Positions 2,372-33,060 of a DNA stretch of 64,000 nt are shown in pieces. The notes under the pieces were generated by a model. That model was not told where the DNA came from. It searched no databases and was given only the letters and a program-made list of their open reading frames with translations. Source of the stretch: Heteronotia binoei (lineage: Eukaryota); assembly GCF_032191835.1 (NCBI RefSeq), contig NC_083240.1, positions 124,001 through 188,000 of the forward strand, given 5' to 3'. Position 1 is the stretch's first letter. Each line of letters starts with the position of its first letter. The translations under genes were made by a program, and so were the position numbers.

Positions 2372-3009
2372 CAATGTGAGATAACCATCAATTCTCTTCT
2401 TTTTATTAAAAGCTGCAAATCAGACTGAAAACCATAATAGACTTTACTGAAAAAACAGCATGATTAGAAAATACAAACGTGAAAATTAACCCTGTAGCTA
2501 ATGGCAAAAACAAACACTACAACTCACACATGCACATACACAATTCTCAAACATTCTTCTGAGACTTCCATCCAGAGAAATGTCATTTGCCTACCGAGGC
2601 AAATTTTTATAGAAAAATATCAGTCTTGGCCTTACTCTAAACCTTTTCTCAATCACAGATGATCTAGAAAAGTTATTGGTCTTTTTTTGTGGTTCAATTC
2701 CAGTCAAGTCTTACTCAGCGACCCCATAGACCAAGTCACGCCAGGCCCGCCTGTCTTCCACCATCCTCTAAAGTCTACTCAAATTCATTTCTGTTACATC
2801 AGTAACCCTGCAGCCATCTCATCTTTTGCCGTCCCCTTCTTTTGCCTTGTCTTTCCCAGCATCAGGATCTTCTCCAGGAAGTGCTCCCTTCTCATTTGGT
2901 GGCCAAAGTATTTGAGCGAACAAAGTATTGAGAACAAAGTATTGTTCTTAAGTACATATAATTTTTTTAAATATTCAATTTATATCCTGCCCTCCTTCAA
3001 TTTATATCC

Positions 3010-3532
3010 TTCAATTTATATCCTACCACTTAGGGCAGGGGTAGTCATATAAGGCATGACAATAAAATGAAAGCATTTCACAAGGGCAAAAAATCCAGAG
3101 TTAAAATGATAATAACAACATAAGAAATCGCCTTAGTGGTGATGCTATGATGTACTCTTCCGAGTGGTGCCTGTGATGCTAGTTGCTGGCCATAAGGCCA
3201 GGGCTACTGCTAGGGGAGGCTGAAAGATGGAGGAATGTGGACACCAGCTGCCTCAACTGAAAGCCTGGCGCCCCAGCACCATCTTACAGGCCCTGAAGAA
3301 TTGTAATAGAGCTTGCAGGGCCCTGATCTCGATGGGTAGCTTGTTCCACCAGAAGGACCTGGCCCTAGTTGAGGCTAGGTGGACATCCTTCAGGCTAGGG
3401 ACAACCAGATGCTGGTCAATTGAGCACAAGGCTCTACAGGGCACATATGGGGAGAGACGGCCCTGGAGAGATCAGCTGCCCTGAGCCTGTCGGGAGGGCG
3501 GGATATAAATCTGATAAATAAATAAATAAATG
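3010..3532. mobile_element. L2 3' fragments (minus-strand ORF end ~3010-3450; plus-strand tail ~3475-3532)
   Basis: Minus strand translates to FWWNKLPIEIRALQALLQFFRACKMVL, like the end of the 18765 L2. Plus-strand ctgagcc...gggagggcgggatataaat...(aata)n tail. Confidence 0.7.
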
Positions 3533-25949: not shown

Positions 25950-26210
25950 GGCGCCCATACAGCCTGGGCCCTGTTTGCGCCTGCGCTACTGGGCGCGCCT
26001 GGATGACGCCACGACGCCGGAGCGCGGCGGGGCGGAAGTGCGTGAGGCGAGGGGCCGCGGGGCGCGTGAGGGTGGGGGGAGCGTGTCCGGCGCGGATTGT
26101 GTTGCCAACCTCCAGGCGGGGGCTGGAGATCTCCCGGGATGCCATCTGCTCTCCTGCGCTTGTGCGCATGACTGGCCGGGAGGGAGATCGGCCTCCCTTC
26201 GCCCCGCCAT
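25950..26210 (+). promoter_or_regulatory. CPLANE2 CpG-island promoter region
   Basis: CpG-rich sequence directly 5' of the ATG, with GC box plus ETS (ggcggggcggaagtg, ~26027-26041), a GTTGCCAAC RFX-like half site (26101-26109) and TGCGCATG (26163-26170). Confidence 0.5.
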
Positions 26211-29200
26211 GCTCGTGCCCCCCGGATCCGTGGTGGTGCTGGACTGGCACAAGAGCCCAGAGGCCGAGCGCTACTTTGCGACTGTCCTGCAGCGGCGGCA
26301 GAAGCGCAGAGCCTTTGGTGAGGGGGAGGAGGCGGGAGGCGGAGGCGGCCCTTGCAGGAGGGAGAGAGAGAAGGCGGGCTGCCCCCCACCGCCCCAGAGA
26401 AGGGAGGGAGGAGGGAGGGAGGGAAGGCAGGGTGCGGCCCTTGCAGGAGGGAGGGAGGGAGAGAAGGCAGGCTGCCCCCCACCGCCCCAGAGAAGGGAGG
26501 GAGGAGGGAGGGAGGGAAGGCAGGGTGCGGCCCTTGCAGGAGGGAGGGAGGGAGAGAAGGCAGGCTGCCCCCCACCGCCCCAGCAGGAGGTAGGGAGAGA
26601 AGGCAGGAGGCGGAGGCGGCCCTTGCAGGAGGGAGGGAGGGAAGGCAGGCTGCCCCCCACCGCCCCAGAGAAGGGAGGGAGGAGGGAGGGAGGGAAGGCA
26701 GGCTGCCCCCCACCGCCCCAGCAGGAGGGAGGGAGGGAGGGCAGGAGGCGGAGGCGGCCCTTGCAGGAGGGAGGGAGGGAGGGAGAGAAGGCGGGCTGCC
26801 CCCCACCGCCCCAGAGAAGGGAGGGAGGAGGGAGGGAGGGAAGGCAGGCTGCCCCCCACCGCCCCAGCAGGAGGGAGGGAGGGAAGGCGGGCTGCCCCCC
26901 ACCGCCCCAGAGAAGGGAGGGAGGAGGGAGGGAGGGAAGGCAGGCTGCCCCCCACCGCCCCAGCAGGAGGGAGGGAGGGAGGGAGGGAAGGCAGGGTGCC
27001 CCCCACCGCCCCAGAGAAGGGAGGGAGGAGGGAGGGAGGGAAGGCAGGCTGCCCCCCACCGCCCCAGCAGGAGGGAGGGAGGGAAGGCGGGCTGCCCCCC
27101 ACCGCCCCAGAGAAGGGAGGGAGGAGGGAGGGAGGGAAGGCAGGCTGCCCCCCACCGCCCCAGCAGGAGGGAGGGAGGGAGGGAGGGAAGGCAGGGTGCC
27201 CCCCACCGCCCCAGAGAAGGGAGGGAGGAGGGAGGGAGGGAAGGCAGGCTGCCCCCCACCGCCCCAGCAGGAGGGAGGGAGGGAGGGAGGGAAGGCAGGG
27301 TGCCCCCCACCGCCCCAGAGAAGGGAGGGAGGAGGGAGGGAGGGAAGGCAGGCTGCCCCCCACCGCCCCAGCAGGAGGGAGGGAGGGAGGGAGGGAAGGC
27401 AGGGTGCCCCCCACCGCCCCAGAGAAGGGAGGGAGGAGGGAGGGAGGGAAGGCGGGCTGCCCCCCACCGCCCCAGCAGGAGGGAGGGAGGGAGGGAGGGA
27501 AGGCAGGGTGCCCCCCACCGCCCCAGAGAAGGGAGGGAGGAGGGAGGGAGGGAAGGCAGGCTGCCCCCCACCGCCCCAGCAGGAGGGAGGGAGGGAGGGA
27601 AGGCAGGCTGCCCCCCACCGCCCCAGAGAAGGGAGGGAGGAGGGAGGGAGGGAAGGCAGGCTGCCCCCCACCGCCCCAGCAGGAGGGAGGGAGGGAGGGC
27701 AGGAGGCGGAGGCGGCCCTTGCAGGAGGGAGAGAGAGAAGGCGGGCTGCCCCCCACCGCCCCAGAGAAGGGAGGGAGGAGGGAGGGAAGGCAGGGTGCGG
27801 CCCTTGCAGGAGGGAGGGAGGGAGAGAAGGCAGGCTGCCCCCCACCGCCCCAGCAGGAGGGAGGGAGGGAAGGCAGGAGGCGGAGGCGGCCCTTGCAGGA
27901 GGGAGAGAGAGAAGGCGGGCTGCCCCCCACCGCCCCAGAGAAGGGAGGGAGGAGGGAGGGAAGGCAGGGTGCGGCCCTTGCAGGAGGGAGGGAGGGAGAG
28001 AAGGCAGGCTGCCCCCCACCGCCCCAGCAGGAGGGAGGGAGGGAAGGCAGGAGGCGGAGGCGGCCCTTGCAGGAGGGAGAGAGAGAAGGCGGGCTGCCCC
28101 CCACCGCCCCAGAGAAGGGAGGGAGGAGGGAGGGAAGGCAGGGTGCGGCCCTTGCAGGAGGGAGGGAGGGAGAGAAGGCAGGCTGCCCCCCACCGCCCCA
28201 GCAGGAGGCAGGGAGAGAAGGCAGGAGGCGGAGGCGGCCCTTGCAGGAGGGAGGGAGGGAGAGAAGGCGGGCTGCCCCCCACCGCCCCAGCAGGAGGGAG
28301 GGAGGGAGGGAGGGAAGGCAGGGTGCCCCCCACCGCCCCAGAGAAGGGAGGGAGGAGGGAGGGAGGGAAGGCAGGCTGCCCCCCACCGCCCCAGCAGGAG
28401 GCAGGGAGAGAAGGCAGGAGGCGGAGGCGGCCCTTGCAGGAGGGAGGGAGGGAGAGAAGGCAGGCTGCCCCCCACCGCCCCAGCAGGAGGCAGGGAGAGA
28501 AGGCAGGAGGCGGAGGCGGCCCTTGCAGGAGGGAGGGAGGGAGAGAAGGCGGGCTGCCCCCCACCGCCCCAGCAGGAGGGAGGGAGGGAAGGCAGGGTGC
28601 CCCCCACCGCCCCAGAGAAGGGAGGGAGGAGGGAGGGAGGGAAGGCAGGCTGCCCCCCACCGCCCCAGCAGGAGGGAGGGAGAGAAGGCAGGAGGCGGAG
28701 GCGGCCCTTGCAGGAGGGAGGGAGGGAGGGAGAGAAGGCAGGAGGCGGCCCCCAGCAGGAGGAAGGAAAGGCAGGGTGCCCCCCACCGCCCCAGCAGGAG
28801 GGAGGGAGGAGGGAGGGAGGGAAGGCAGGGTGCCCCCCACCGCCCCAGAGAAGGGAGGGAGGAGGGAGGGAGGGAAGGCAGGGTGCCCCCCACCGCCCCA
28901 GCAGGAGGGAGGGAGAGAAGGCAGGGTGCCCCCCACCGCCCCAGAGAAGGGAGGGAGGGAAGGCAGGAGGCGGAGGCGGCCCTTGCAGGAGGGAGAGAAG
29001 GCAGGGTGCCCCCCACCGCCCCAGCAGGAGGGAGGGAGGGAGAGAAGGCAGGGTGCCCCCCACCGCCCCAGAGAAGGGAGGGAGGGAAGGCAGGAGGCGG
29101 AGGCGGCCCTTGCAGGAGGGAGAGAAGGCAGGCTGCCCCCCACCGCCCCAGCAGGAGGGGGATGCGGAGGCGGCCTTTGCAGGAGGGGGGGCCCTGGCCT

Positions 29201-31193
29201 TGCAGACCTTGGGACCTCCACAGCTGGCTGCTGCGCGTGGGTGGCAGCCGTGCCGCTGGACAAGCCCTGTGCATGCTCAGGCCAAGGTCGATTCGCCTGT
29301 CGCTTCCCAGGGCTGCTGGAGAGGCCGGTGCTCCCACCGCCAGCCGTTGCCGCCACTGCCAGCTACAAGGTCTTCGTGTCAGGGAAGAGTGCGGTGGGCA
29401 AGTCTGCTCTGGTGGCCTCCCTGGGGGGTCTGCCGGTCCCCTCAGCCCATCATGAGACAACAGGTGAGGCTTCAGTTCCCCAGCCTGTCCAATGGGAGGG
29501 AGGGTCTCTGGGAGAAGAGACAAGGGAAAACTTCTGGAGGGAGTGCAAAGAGCTTCCTTTGCTGAAGGGCACTGAGAAGGCGGGTGAGTGAAGGGCAGCA
29601 GGAAGGGAGATCCCATGCAGCGCAGAAGAGGCAGCTGGAAGGCACACATGGGCCAAAGAGATTCTTTCCTGAATTCTGGGTCCTCGGAACTGCCGCTATT
29701 GTGTGGGTTTTTAAAAAGTCACGATAGGGCAAATTCCATATTTACTTGGGCTGCGGTATGTAAGCCACTGGATTCACAGAATCCTTCCTCAGACGCTTCT
29801 GCTCAATTAGGCGTTCTGCGAATTTCAGAAAGCATTCCCCTACAGCAGGGGTGGCCAACGGTAGCTCTCAAGATGTTTTTGCCTACAACTCCCATCAGCC
29901 CCAGCCAACATGGCCAATGACTGGGGCTGATGGGAGTTGTAGGCAAAAAAACATCTGGAGAGCTACTGTTGGCTACCCCTGCCCTACAAAGCTGTTTCAC
30001 GTATCCTGTGTCTGGTGTCATTTGGAGCCAGCGGAAGCACTTCTGAAGTGCTGGGAGCCGGACGCCTGTCTTTGTGACGCTTCCTGATATGTGCAGGCCC
30101 TGTGAAGTGGTTCTCTTGCAGGGATCCAGACGACGACCGTGTATTGGGCAGCCAAGCTGTGTGAGAGCAGCAGGCCCCTGTTCTTCAAGTTCACGTTCTG
30201 GGACTGCGGGGAGTCTGTGCTGAAGAAGTTTGATCACATCCTGCCGGTGAGTGCGGGGCAGTTGGCACCAAGAGGGAGGGAGGGAGGGAGGGGACCTTTC
30301 TCATCAGGGATCCTCGTTGCCCTCCAACCACCCCCAGGCCTGCACCCAGAATGTGGATGGCTTCCTCCTCCTCTTCTCCTTCACCGACCGGGCCTCTTTT
30401 GATGACTTGCCGAGCCAGATCTCTCGCGTGACGGATGGAGCTGAGAAGGCTGTCAAAATAGTCATCGGCACCAAATATCCTTTAATACTGGCACGCTCAT
30501 GACACTCTGCTCTGACACTTTTCTTAATGCTTCCCTTGAGAAGGGGAAAGTACTTTTTGCATCCTCAGAGCCACAGGATCACTGTAGAGGTGGATATTTG
30601 CCTATTGAACAGCTGAGACACACCCATTTGCCCGGAGAGGTCCATCTGGAAAGGTGCTGCTCCAGCTTGGTCTTCCTCTGAGGTCCGGGGGGGGGGGGGG
30701 GGCGGGGGCTACTCTACTAGTGATGGGGGGGCATGGTTCATATAGGGAAATGCCCAGCAGTGCTTGGTAGGCAGAGGGTCCCAGGAGCAATGCCAGGTAG
30801 CGTCTCCCAAATGACAAGAAGGTCCCTTCTTTGTGTGTGTGTGTGTGTATGTGTGTATGTCTGGGGCCCCGGAGTGCTGCTGTCAGCCATTCCCAGGAAG
30901 TTGGCAGGGGGTATCTGACCCTCAAAAGAAGGCAGCTTGACATGGCTGGAGGCCCCCTTCCTTAACTCCTCTCCAGGTTTGACCAGTTTGCACACACGGA
31001 CGTCACGGAGCGTGACATAGCTGCCTTCCGCCTCACTTGGGGGCTGCCGGTGCTGCGAGCAAAGAGCACCCGCCCCCCGGACAGCTGCACCGGCCTGTCA
31101 GACGTGGCCCACCTTCTGAACAGGCTTGCTGAGCACCTGTGGCGGCAGGACCAGTGGGCAGCGGGCCTTCTCCCCCCCGCCCCGCAGGCCTAG
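26209..31193 (+). CDS. CPLANE2: Ciliogenesis and planar polarity effector 2 (RSG1 small GTPase), 5 exons, 246 aa
   Basis: Exons 26209-26317, 29311-29463, 30122-30246, 30338-30474, 30977-31193 (741 nt, in frame). P-loop GKSAVGKS, FWDCGES, FSFTDRASFDDLP, VIGTKFDQ match recalled RSG1. Intron 4 is U12-type (AT...AG). Confidence 0.95.
26330..29190. repeat. Modular G-rich minisatellite filling CPLANE2 intron 1
   Basis: Shuffled modules gg(c/g)tgccccccaccgcccc, agagaagggagggaggagggaggga, agcaggagggaggga and gaggcggaggcggcccttgcagg. A 174-bp higher-order unit occurs three times (27721, 27895, 28069). Confidence 0.95.
29846..29981. mobile_element. Palindromic hAT-type MITE in CPLANE2 intron 2
   Basis: TIRs caggggtggccaac / gttggctacccctg; 8-bp TSD ccctacag / ccctacaa. 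Confidence 0.82.
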
Positions 31194-31799
31194 AATAGCC
31201 CCTGGGGAGGTTTGGCTGCCTTGGTCTTGGGGACCTCAGTGGCATGTGGCTGGATGAGAAGGCTCCCTGCTTATGCTTTCTGAGATGTGCCTTAGAATCT
31301 GGGTATCTCCTGTCCCCTGGGGTGGGTGGAAAAGCCACCCCCACTTCTCCTGAGCTGCAGAGCAGTGGTGTGTCGGGGGGGGGCAGCGTCACAGTCGGCA
31401 GCGGATTGCAGGAGAAGTGGGCTGTGTTCTCTCCCACCCACTTCAGTGCAGCAGGCTTTGCTTTGGGACAGGCCTGTCTGCTTGTGTGCCCGCGTAACGT
31501 TGCCTTGGTAGCAGTGCCAAGGAGAAAAACAGAGACGGGGAGAAAGACTGAGCAGCCAGAAGACACCAAATATCTCCCTTACTTCATGAAAAAATGCACT
31601 TGAAAAATACACAAAACACAAGTAGTATAAGAAAATTATCCATCTATAAGGCAAAAAAAAAAAATCAGAATACTTTGTTACTCATGCTATTTATTGCCAA
31701 TACATTCAAATGTCTATAAATGCAAAAGTAACCATATACCAAACCACCAATAGTAACCATATACCAAACCACCAAATTCCAGGCTTCCAAGAAAAATGT

Positions 31800-33060
31800 T
31801 AGCATGTTCAACACTCAAAATTGTATGAATATGAATTCTCCAAATGTGCATAAAGGTAAGTTCTGAACAGACTTTCTGTAGTTAAACTTCCTCTTAAGGT
31901 AGATATCTTTATCAAGCGATGCACCTGTAAACAACCCAAGAATGTGAAAATAACACCGGTAGCAGCATCAATATCCAACCAAAGGCAAAAGGTAGATGTA
32001 TGCTGCAGAACCTTCCTTACACAGGCCTTTACACTGAAGTTCTCATGACTATGCCTCAAGTGCAAAATATTTTTAATGCTTCTTTATCCAGAGCCTTGCA
32101 GCCTCTTTAACATTCAGGACACGATGGCTCCACTCTTCCATCAGGCTAAGAGCTCTCAGTGAAAATTGTCCCCACCCACACCCTTCAAATAGATGCAACA
32201 TCACACAGGTGCTTCAAGCAAGTCTTAAAAGGACAGTGTCAGATTACCAAAAGCAAGACATCATTTTGCTGGTTAAGACCTTTTGGTTCTAATGAATTAA
32301 ACGTGGCTAAATCTGGCTTCTTGTTGCAGAAGTATCTTTTTGGGGTGAATATTACTATACAGATGAGGCTTAACCTGTTGAATGACAGCAAATTTGAAAT
32401 CAGGAGATTGAAATGATTCCTCAGTGGGGCACCCCTGTGGCATGCTTAAGGTGTGAATCACATCACGTGCTTTGTGCTCCAGCACCCTCATCCTTGCTGG
32501 TCCTCATGAGCCATCTATGCAGAGCAGGGAACAGGGAAATATTATGCAGCAGATGGACCTCTCGGTCGGGCAACTGTAAAGTCCTTGTATAGAATTTTTT
32601 TTCCCCATTGGGAAGATCTGTAGTGGGAGCCTCCTATACAAATCTGCCTGCTGCACAACCTTCACAACTGAACATGCCTCTAGGTAATGTAGGTTCTTCC
32701 CTTCGTCTTTTATACAGAATATATCAGCCTGAACTAGTGAATCTCTCAATGTCCTAGTACGTCTATATGCTACTTTTAAGTTGTTGACAAGCTGGGGTCT
32801 CATGTAGACACTATCCCAGTGTCAGCAAATTATACTGGAAAGAGCTGGAGCCAAATGTGCTCCAAACCAAACCCTTTCTAGGCTGGAATGCCTTCCGTAT
32901 TAGGAGGCGCTCTCTGTCCTCCTGTGCTGCTCTAAGTCTTGATTTCTGCAAGGTTTTGCCAGAAGAGCATCTCTCTTGATTGACAGTTGCCCGATCAATT
33001 GATCTGCTTCCTGTTCGTAGTCTGTAGCACTGCTGCAATTGTGTGTTCAGTCTCAGATAT
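31800..33060 (-). mobile_element. Decayed Penelope-like retroelement (RT thumb plus GIY-YIG endonuclease remnant)
   Basis: Minus-strand fragments in the expected order: SRLRAAQEDRERLL, KVAYRRTRTLRDSLVQAD, SCPTERSICCIIFPCSLLCI (degenerate GIY), RVLEHK, FKFAVIQQV...LLQQEA. Stops and frameshifts present. Confidence 0.6.

What the first reader, a model, noticed from the sequence alone, without database searches (positions are those of the whole stretch)
30475..30976. Minor-spliceosome (U12) intron with non-canonical AT-AG ends in CPLANE2
The frame requires ...GGC ACC AA|ATATCCTTTAA...TTCCTTAAC-tcctctccAG|G TTT GAC (GTK-FDQ). The 5' site is a perfect U12 ATATCCTTT and the branch point TTCCTTAAC (30958-30966) lies ~11 nt upstream of the 3' site. 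The terminus is AG rather than the usual AC, and the nearest downstream AC is out of frame. Mixed AT-AG U12 introns are rare, GT-AG predictors would mis-model this gene, and minor-spliceosome defects are linked to ciliary phenotypes (established).
Basis: partly seen in the sequence, partly recalled or inferred. Interest (0 to 1): 0.72.

Follow-up and report, generated by a model that had tools for sequence, protein, structure and literature searches.

The report
AT-AG minor-type intron in gecko CPLANE2
It has the signals of the rare "minor" splicing machinery but an unusual A instead of G as its first letter, which is a single-letter variant of an intron already catalogued in human and mouse, so it is real but ordinary.

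Summary
The observation and the reading both hold. Window 30475-30976 (502 nt, + strand) is the fourth and last intron of CPLANE2/RSG1.

- **Signals:** it starts ATATCCTTT, carries TTCCTTAAC at 30958-30966 (11-12 nt before the 3' end), and ends AG.
- **Protein fit:** the flanking exons match residues 131-175 and 177-254 of the solved CPLANE2 chain 7q3e_D. Exactly one residue (K176) is missing, which is the split codon AA|G.
- **RNA evidence:** transcript contigs from two runs of one study carry the joint 30474^30977 ("AT..AG", no positional ambiguity, 138 nt on the shorter side). Four raw reads from a second study stop at 30474 and continue with the first letters of exon 5.
- **Orthologues:** the same intron is listed as a minor intron in mouse and human, with CAA|GTATCCTTT. 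Three unlabelled vertebrate contigs also have GT-AG with U12 signals. The gecko therefore differs by G to A at +1, a GT-AG to AT-AG subtype switch.

AT-AG is the commonest non-canonical U12 class (11 in human, 8 in mouse) and often switches with GT-AG between species. This is a new member of a known kind, of low interest.

Not tested: independent DNA reads for the A at 30475, dependence on the minor spliceosome, and when the change arose. The scan noted this stretch once before, as the same first-reader note.

The parts
26209..26317 (+). CPLANE2 exon 1 coding part (ATG at 26209), followed by GT
   Evidence: Sequence. Exon arithmetic gives five exons summing to 741 nt, which is 247 codons running from ATG to TAG. 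Not covered by the reads I laid.
29311..29463 (+). CPLANE2 exon 2 (P-loop GKSAVGKS)
   Evidence: Sequence. The last 30 letters of this exon, up to 29460, are the loose end of RNA contigs X1 and X2 lying before 30119. This places the junction at 29463^30122, with CAG ambiguous on both sides.
30122..30246 (+). CPLANE2 exon 3
   Evidence: RNA contigs and raw reads. The GT..AG joint 30246^30338 appears in all four runs.
30338..30474 (+). CPLANE2 exon 4, ending in the first two letters (AA) of a Lys codon
   Evidence: Matches residues 131-175 of PDB 7q3e_D, E = 1.3e-12. Covered by RNA in all four runs.
30475..30976 (+). Intron 4, 502 nt, phase 2, with AT-AG termini and U12-type signals. Contains a G-run (about 30688-30706) and a (TG)n microsatellite (about 30833-30860).
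   Evidence: The joint 30474^30977 is in RNA contigs X1 and X2, and in four soft-clipped raw reads of X6. No Rfam match lies inside the intron.
30475..30483 (+). 5' splice site ATATCCTTT, matching the U12 consensus /RTATCCTTT at 9 of 9 positions
   Evidence: Orthologues have GTATCCTT at the same place.
30958..30966 (+). Branch-site element TTCCTTAAC. The candidate branch adenosines at 30964 and 30965 lie 12 and 11 nt from the last intron letter.
   Evidence: The 12-mer at 30956-30967 is identical to the mouse Tmem150c branch site, which scored 91.7 in Olthof 2019 Table S2.
30975..30976 (+). 3' terminal dinucleotide AG, preceded by only 8 pyrimidines after the branch site
30977..31193 (+). CPLANE2 exon 5 coding part (G, then FDQFAHTDV... 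to TAG at 31191-31193). The 3' UTR continues to at least 31691.
   Evidence: Matches residues 177-254 of PDB 7q3e_D, E = 1.3e-18. RNA contig X1 covers 30977-31691.

Best explanation
Window 30475-30976 is the last intron of the gecko CPLANE2 (RSG1) gene. It is a U12-type (minor-spliceosome) intron of the non-canonical AT-AG subtype. By inference, U11 and then U6atac recognise ATATCCTTT, U12 pairs with TTCCTTAAC and bulges one of its two adenosines, and the AG 11-12 nt downstream is used as the 3' site. This joins AA to G and restores the Lys codon of the TKFD (G4, NKxD-like) motif of the GTPase. The intron is the orthologue of the GT-AG U12-type intron of mouse and human CPLANE2. It differs by one substitution, G to A at intron position +1, which arose somewhere on the lineage leading to this gecko. 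What is shown: the exact joint in RNA, the signals, and the orthology. What is inferred: use of the minor spliceosome, the direction and fixation of the G to A change, and any effect on splicing efficiency.
For: Sequence features sit at the stated coordinates. The exons abut in the solved CPLANE2 chain with exactly one residue between them. The joint 30474^30977 ('AT..AG', both = 0, side 138) is in RNA contigs from two samples of study P1. Four raw reads of X6 (study P3) are clipped after 30474, and their overhang of up to 17 letters equals the start of exon 5. The other three introns of the gene are ordinary GT-AG introns with GTGAG 5' sites, and the five exons sum to 741 nt from ATG to TAG. 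Mouse Rsg1 and human CPLANE2 are listed as minor-intron genes in both species, with 5' site CAA|GTATCCTTT and branch sites GGCACCTTAACC and GGCTCCTTGACC (PMC6717393 Table S2). Three further vertebrate contigs have GT-AG here, with GTATCCTT and TCCTT[A/G]AC ending 12-14 nt before the AG. AT-AG U12 introns exist naturally (11 in human, 8 in mouse) and often alternate with GT-AG between species by a single letter (PMC1557818). Other U12 introns were noted in the same genome by unchecked first-reader notes.
Against: No read covers 30475-30476 themselves. The RNA reads are spliced, and the few unspliced reads cover only 30855-30968, so the A at +1 rests on the assembly alone. Dependence on the minor spliceosome was not tested and cannot be tested here. 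The review PMC3584512 states that AT-AG combinations 'appear to be disfavored' and are poorly spliced intermediates, so a G allele could also exist in the population. Run X5 covers exons 4 and 5 at 1-4x but gave no listed joint there; this reflects low depth and is not a contradiction.
Confidence: 0.88

Rival explanations
1. The intron is an ordinary GT-AG U12-type intron, as in every orthologue seen. On this view the A at 30475 is a base error of the assembly, or a rare or heterozygous allele of the sequenced individual.
For: All five orthologues available have G at +1: mouse and human and L001, L004 and L005. No independent read covers the base. The RNA runs differ from the reference at about 1% of exon positions, so the population is polymorphic (table 3).
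Against: Single-base errors in finished assemblies are rare. A genome is expected to hold about ten true AT-AG U12 introns, against far fewer than one erroneous +1 base among a few hundred GT-AG U12 introns (my estimate). The rest of the 5' site is intact.
Confidence: 0.05
2. The intron is removed by the major (U2-type) spliceosome as a non-canonical AT-AG intron, and its resemblance to U12 signals does not determine how it is spliced.
For: The major spliceosome can splice some AT-AC introns, and some consensus-bearing sites are used by both machineries (PMC11347168; abstract of PMC10853781).
Against: CAA|ATATCC is a very poor U1 site, whereas the other three introns of this gene have GTGAG. 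The site matches the U12 5' consensus at 9 of 9 positions and the branch-site element at 9 of 9. The branch-to-3' distance is 11-12 nt and there is no long pyrimidine tract. The orthologue is classed as minor.
Confidence: 0.03
3. The genomic A at +1 is converted to inosine in the pre-mRNA (A-to-I editing), so the spliceosome in effect sees a GT-AG U12 intron.
For: It is only a logical possibility, because inosine reads as G.
Against: No unspliced read covers the site. I looked for no duplex partner of the 5' site. A 5' A is known to support U12 splicing without editing: natural AT-AC and AT-AG introns exist.
Confidence: 0.01

Closest known systems
Minor (U12-type) GT-AG intron of mouse Rsg1 and human CPLANE2, as listed in MIDB (Olthof et al. 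2019, PMC6717393, Tables S1 and S2)
   Same: Same gene and same position: after the second letter of the Lys codon of the G(S/T)K|FDQ motif. Same exon end CAA. Same +2 to +9 letters TATCCTTT. A CCTTRAC branch site. Terminal AG.
   Different: The first intron letter is A in the gecko and G in mouse and human, and also G in three other vertebrate contigs. The gecko branch site (TTCCTTAAC) is closer to consensus than the mammalian ones. Length is 502 nt, against 1162 nt in mouse and 212 nt in human.
Natural AT-AG U12-type introns, for example human XPO4, ACTR10, SCN10A, NUP210, USP21, RAPGEFL1 and INPP5B (Sheth et al. 2006, PMC1557818, Tables 2 and 3)
   Same: U12 5' site beginning AT, a U12 branch site and a terminal AG. 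For XPO4, ACTR10 and SCN10A the orthologue in the other species is GT-AG, the same one-letter switch as seen here.
   Different: A different gene and lineage. CPLANE2 is not among the AT-AG cases listed for human or mouse.
Canonical AT-AC U12-type introns
   Same: An identical 5' splice site (ATATCCTTT) and branch-site consensus, with a short branch-to-3' distance.
   Different: The 3' terminal letter is G, not C. No in-frame AC lies within reach of the branch site.

Membership tests
U12-type (minor-spliceosome) intron | Extended 5' splice-site consensus /RTATCCTTT | tested here: met
   ATATCCTTT at 30475-30483, matching 9 of 9 positions. Closely similar 12-mers (AAA/GAA + ATATCCTTT) score 94-99 in Olthof 2019 Table S2.
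U12-type (minor-spliceosome) intron | Branch-site consensus TCCTTRAC | tested here: met
   TTCCTTAAC at 30958-30966. The 12-mer CCTTCCTTAACT is identical to a listed mouse minor-intron branch site that scored 91.7.
U12-type (minor-spliceosome) intron | Short branch-site to 3' splice-site distance (about 10-15 nt) and no long polypyrimidine tract | tested here: met
   The branch adenosines lie 11 or 12 nt from the last intron letter, and only 8 pyrimidines lie between the branch site and the AG. The importance of a short distance is stated in PMC3584512. The numeric optimum is from my own knowledge of Dietrich et al. 2001, which is not held in the library.
U12-type (minor-spliceosome) intron | Orthologous intron classed as minor in other species (positional conservation) | tested here: met
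   Mouse Rsg1 and human CPLANE2 are both listed as minor-intron genes. L001, L004 and L005 carry U12 signals at the same codon position.
U12-type (minor-spliceosome) intron | Splicing depends on U11, U12, U4atac and U6atac snRNPs | not testable with these tools
   This needs knock-down or inhibition experiments. No such data set for this species was available.
AT-AG subtype of U12-type introns | The spliced RNA defines termini AT and AG without ambiguity | tested here: met
   The joint 30474^30977 has ends AT..AG and both = 0 in contigs X1 and X2. Four X6 reads are clipped at 30474 with an overhang equal to the start of exon 5.
AT-AG subtype of U12-type introns | The A at +1 is present in independent genomic or pre-mRNA reads | not tested
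   No laid read covers 30475.
CPLANE2 / RSG1 small GTPase gene | Exon translations match a solved CPLANE2 chain better than any other GTPase | tested here: met
   Against 7q3e_D, exon 4 gives E = 1.3e-12 and exon 5 gives E = 1.3e-18. The next best match is REM2 at E = 0.002.
CPLANE2 / RSG1 small GTPase gene | A complete open reading frame across all exons | tested here: met
   Exon lengths of 109, 153, 125, 137 and 217 nt sum to 741 nt from ATG to TAG, and all splice sites were identified. This was checked by arithmetic only; the joined protein was not built or searched.

The most novel reading that the evidence does not exclude
The A at +1 is fixed in this gecko lineage. CPLANE2 intron 4 would then be a stable, efficiently spliced 'intermediate' between the GT-AG and AT-AC U12 subtypes, in a gene with a single essential isoform. 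That would be a natural case for asking how the minor spliceosome tolerates an A(+1)/G(-1) pair in the second catalytic step. It could also show whether such intermediates persist for long evolutionary times in squamates, rather than being quickly resolved.
Probability: 0.5. Interest if true: 0.3.

Novelty: new member of a known kind. Interest (0 to 1): 0.2.

Why it matters
The main use is for annotation. A GT-AG-only gene predictor cannot place this junction. It would shift or drop the last coding exon of CPLANE2 and destroy the TK|FD (G4) guanine-binding motif. RNA-aware pipelines will get it right.

For biology, it adds one more documented GT-AG to AT-AG subtype switch in a conserved minor intron, in a reptile. 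The literature tables I read cover only human, mouse, fly and Arabidopsis.

CPLANE2 belongs to the cilium and planar-polarity gene set, in which U12 introns are over-represented (PMC9992838). That link is already established in mammals and does not depend on the gecko variant.

Tried and rejected
- **Paper searches for the gene and minor introns.** Searches for CPLANE2 with 'minor intron' and for RSG1 with U12 found nothing relevant in main texts. The information was in supplementary tables.
- **Looking for more orthologues.** Two exon-wise word searches of the protein collection returned two proteins each, four in all from three source organisms (P0001 and P0003 lie on the same contig, L001). 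All came from unlabelled Logan assemblies. None is close to the gecko (69-77% nucleotide identity in exon 4), so the G to A change cannot be dated.
- **Identifying the source organisms.** A paper search for the five run accessions found nothing.
- **Primary mutational papers.** Dietrich et al. 2001 and 2005 on U12 terminal dinucleotides are not held in the library. Statements about them rest on the review PMC3584512 and on my own knowledge.
- **Structured RNA in the region.** An Rfam scan of 29000-32000 found nothing inside intron 4.
- **AT-AC reading.** I rejected an AT-AC reading that uses the downstream AC at 30982-30983. It is out of frame, and the RNA uses the AG.
- **The 5' motif as evidence on its own.** I rejected this because two hits in the window is no more than chance.

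Full report
**What is in the sequence**

One search shows, on the + strand...GGC ACC AA followed by ATATCCTTTAAT from 30475. TTCCTTAAC lies at 30958-30966. The stretch ...TCCTCTCCAG ends at 30976 and is followed by GTTTGACCAG.

RTATCCTT occurs only twice in the window when both strands are counted. About 3.9 would be expected for uniform composition (my arithmetic), so the 5' motif by itself is not evidence. The evidence is the conjunction described below.

**Gene and frame**

- The translation of 30338-30472 matches residues 131-175 of the solved chain 7q3e_D, 'Ciliogenesis and planar polarity effector 2' (E = 1.3e-12). The next best match is REM2 at E = 0.002.
- The translation of 30978-31190 matches residues 177-254 of the same chain (E = 1.3e-18).
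- Exactly one residue, K176, is left over. That is the codon split as AA|G by a junction at 30474^30977.
- Reading outward, I obtain five coding exons: 26209-26317, 29311-29463, 30122-30246, 30338-30474 and 30977-31193. They sum to 741 nt from ATG to TAG.
- Introns 1-3 are ordinary GT-AG introns with GTGAG 5' sites. Only intron 4 is AT-AG.
- I checked the frame by arithmetic and searched the exons separately.

**RNA evidence**

One search offered RNA runs under the same coded species label.

- **Assembled contigs.** Transcript contigs of two runs (X1 and X2: two samples, one study) align as 30119-30245, 30337-30474 and 30977 onward. The tool reports the second joint as 'skips 502, ends AT..AG, both = 0', with 138 letters on the shorter side.
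- **Raw reads, second study.** In X6, four reads end at 30474. Their unaligned tails have the consensus GTTTGACCAGTTTGCAC, which is the start of exon 5.
- **Control junction.** The GT-AG joint 30246^30338 is seen in all four runs.
- **Intron coverage.** Intron 4 has no coverage except for one or two X6 reads over 30855-30968 that run into exon 5. This is a trace of unspliced pre-mRNA and is too thin to quantify.
- **X5.** Run X5 covers the exons at 1-4x but gives no listed joint at intron 4.

**Why U12-type**

- The 5' site matches /RTATCCTTT at 9 of 9 positions.
- The branch element matches TCCTTRAC, with an added 5' T.
- The two candidate branch adenosines are 12 and 11 nt from the intron end.
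- Only eight pyrimidines separate the branch site from the AG.
- These are the defining features of the class according to the review PMC3584512. The review also states that either A of the consensus can serve as the branch point.
- The 12-mer at 30956-30967 is identical to a mouse minor-intron branch site that scored 91.7 in Olthof 2019 Table S2. 5' sites differing from the gecko's only at position -3 score 94-99 there.
- Use of the minor spliceosome is an inference from these signals and from orthology. It was not tested.

**Orthologues**

- Olthof et al. 2019 (PMC6717393) list mouse Rsg1 (an 1162-nt intron) and human CPLANE2 (212 nt) among minor introns.
- Their Table S2 gives the 5' site CAAGTATCCTTT for both species. 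The branch sites are GGCACCTTAACC in mouse and GGCTCCTTGACC in human, and the status is 'Both'.
- Exon-wise protein searches led to three unlabelled genomic contigs, L001, L004 and L005.
- In all three the intron sits at the same codon position. It starts GTATCCTT, carries TCCTT[A/G]AC ending 12-14 nt before the 3' end, and ends AG.
- None of the three is close to the gecko (69-77% identity in exon 4). Their exon 5 reads FDQFAHTDV as in the gecko, not FDQYMHTDV as in the solved chain 7q3e_D, so they are probably sauropsids.
- The simplest reading is an ancestral GT-AG U12 intron and a G to A change at +1 on the gecko's lineage. When it happened, and whether it is fixed, is unknown.

**Comparison with what is known**

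- Sheth et al. 2006 (PMC1557818) counted AT-AG as the most frequent non-canonical U12 class: 11 in human and 8 in mouse.
- They found that more than half of non-canonical U12 introns differ between human and mouse, always by one letter. XPO4, ACTR10 and SCN10A are AT-AG in human and GT-AG in mouse.
- They proposed AT-AG introns as viable intermediates between GT-AG and AT-AC.
- The review PMC3584512 calls such combinations disfavoured and poorly spliced.
- From my own knowledge of Dietrich et al. 2005, a 5' A can splice to any 3' terminal residue, with C preferred. That paper is not held in the library.
- The gecko intron is therefore a further member of a described class, inside an intron already catalogued as minor in mammals.

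**Rivals**

- **Assembly error or rare allele at 30475 (about 0.05).** Every orthologue has G and no independent read covers the base. However, true AT-AG introns are expected to far outnumber such errors.
- **Major-spliceosome splicing of a non-canonical intron (about 0.03).** This is contradicted by the very poor U1 site and the perfect U12 signals.
- **A-to-I editing of +1 (about 0.01).** Nothing supports this.

**Verdict**

This is a new member of a known kind, of low interest. Its practical value is for annotation, because GT-AG-only models would break the TK|FD motif of the GTPase.

Noticed in passing
window 26318-29310 (array about 26350-29160): CPLANE2 intron 1 (GT-AG, 2993 nt) is almost entirely a G+C-rich, purine-skewed minisatellite. 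The unit is about 52/104 nt, with roughly 25 copies of the 104-nt period at 81-96% matches. It opens spurious ORFs of more than 1000 aa on both strands. In the sequence it sits between ...RRAFG and LLERPV... of the protein.
   Followed up: partly
window 29871-29956 (CPLANE2 intron 2): An 86-nt hairpin matches the microRNA precursor model mir-5408 on both strands (62 and 55 bits, below the gathering score of 90). It also matches several other hairpin miRNA models weakly. It looks like a palindromic, probably transposon-derived, inverted repeat rather than a curated miRNA.
   Followed up: no
window 30855-30968: One or two raw reads of run X6 cover the last ~120 nt of intron 4 and continue into exon 5. 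No read covers the 5' part of the intron. This is a trace of unspliced pre-mRNA, too thin to say whether the intron is slowly spliced.
   Followed up: no
window 31655-31700: All four RNA runs clip at 31691 with the same overhang (GCCAATAAATTC...). X6 also clips at 31655-31657, and contig X1 lacks 4 letters at 31653. Either the 3' UTR of the transcripts differs from the reference here, or this is an effect of the end of the laid stretch.
   Followed up: no
window 3004-3011 (+): This is the only other RTATCCTT in the window (TTT|ATATCCTTC), in an A+T-rich stretch. Two hits are within chance expectation, and I did not check it for a branch site or an exon.
   Followed up: no
L001 786-953; L004 612-946; L005 497-794: Three unlabelled Logan genomic contigs (SRR12196012, SRR28961925, SRR31946008) carry the orthologous CPLANE2 intron as a short GT-AG U12-type intron of 168, 335 and 298 nt. 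In L001 the downstream exon starts with A, giving AA|A, which is still Lys. The source organisms are unknown.
   Followed up: partly
window 31040-31100 (exon 5): Relative to the solved CPLANE2 chain 7q3e_D and to L001 and L005, the gecko protein lacks about 8 residues in the C-terminal loop: KSTRPPDSCTGLSD against KSV..RRLADGRTLDGRAGLAD.
   Followed up: no
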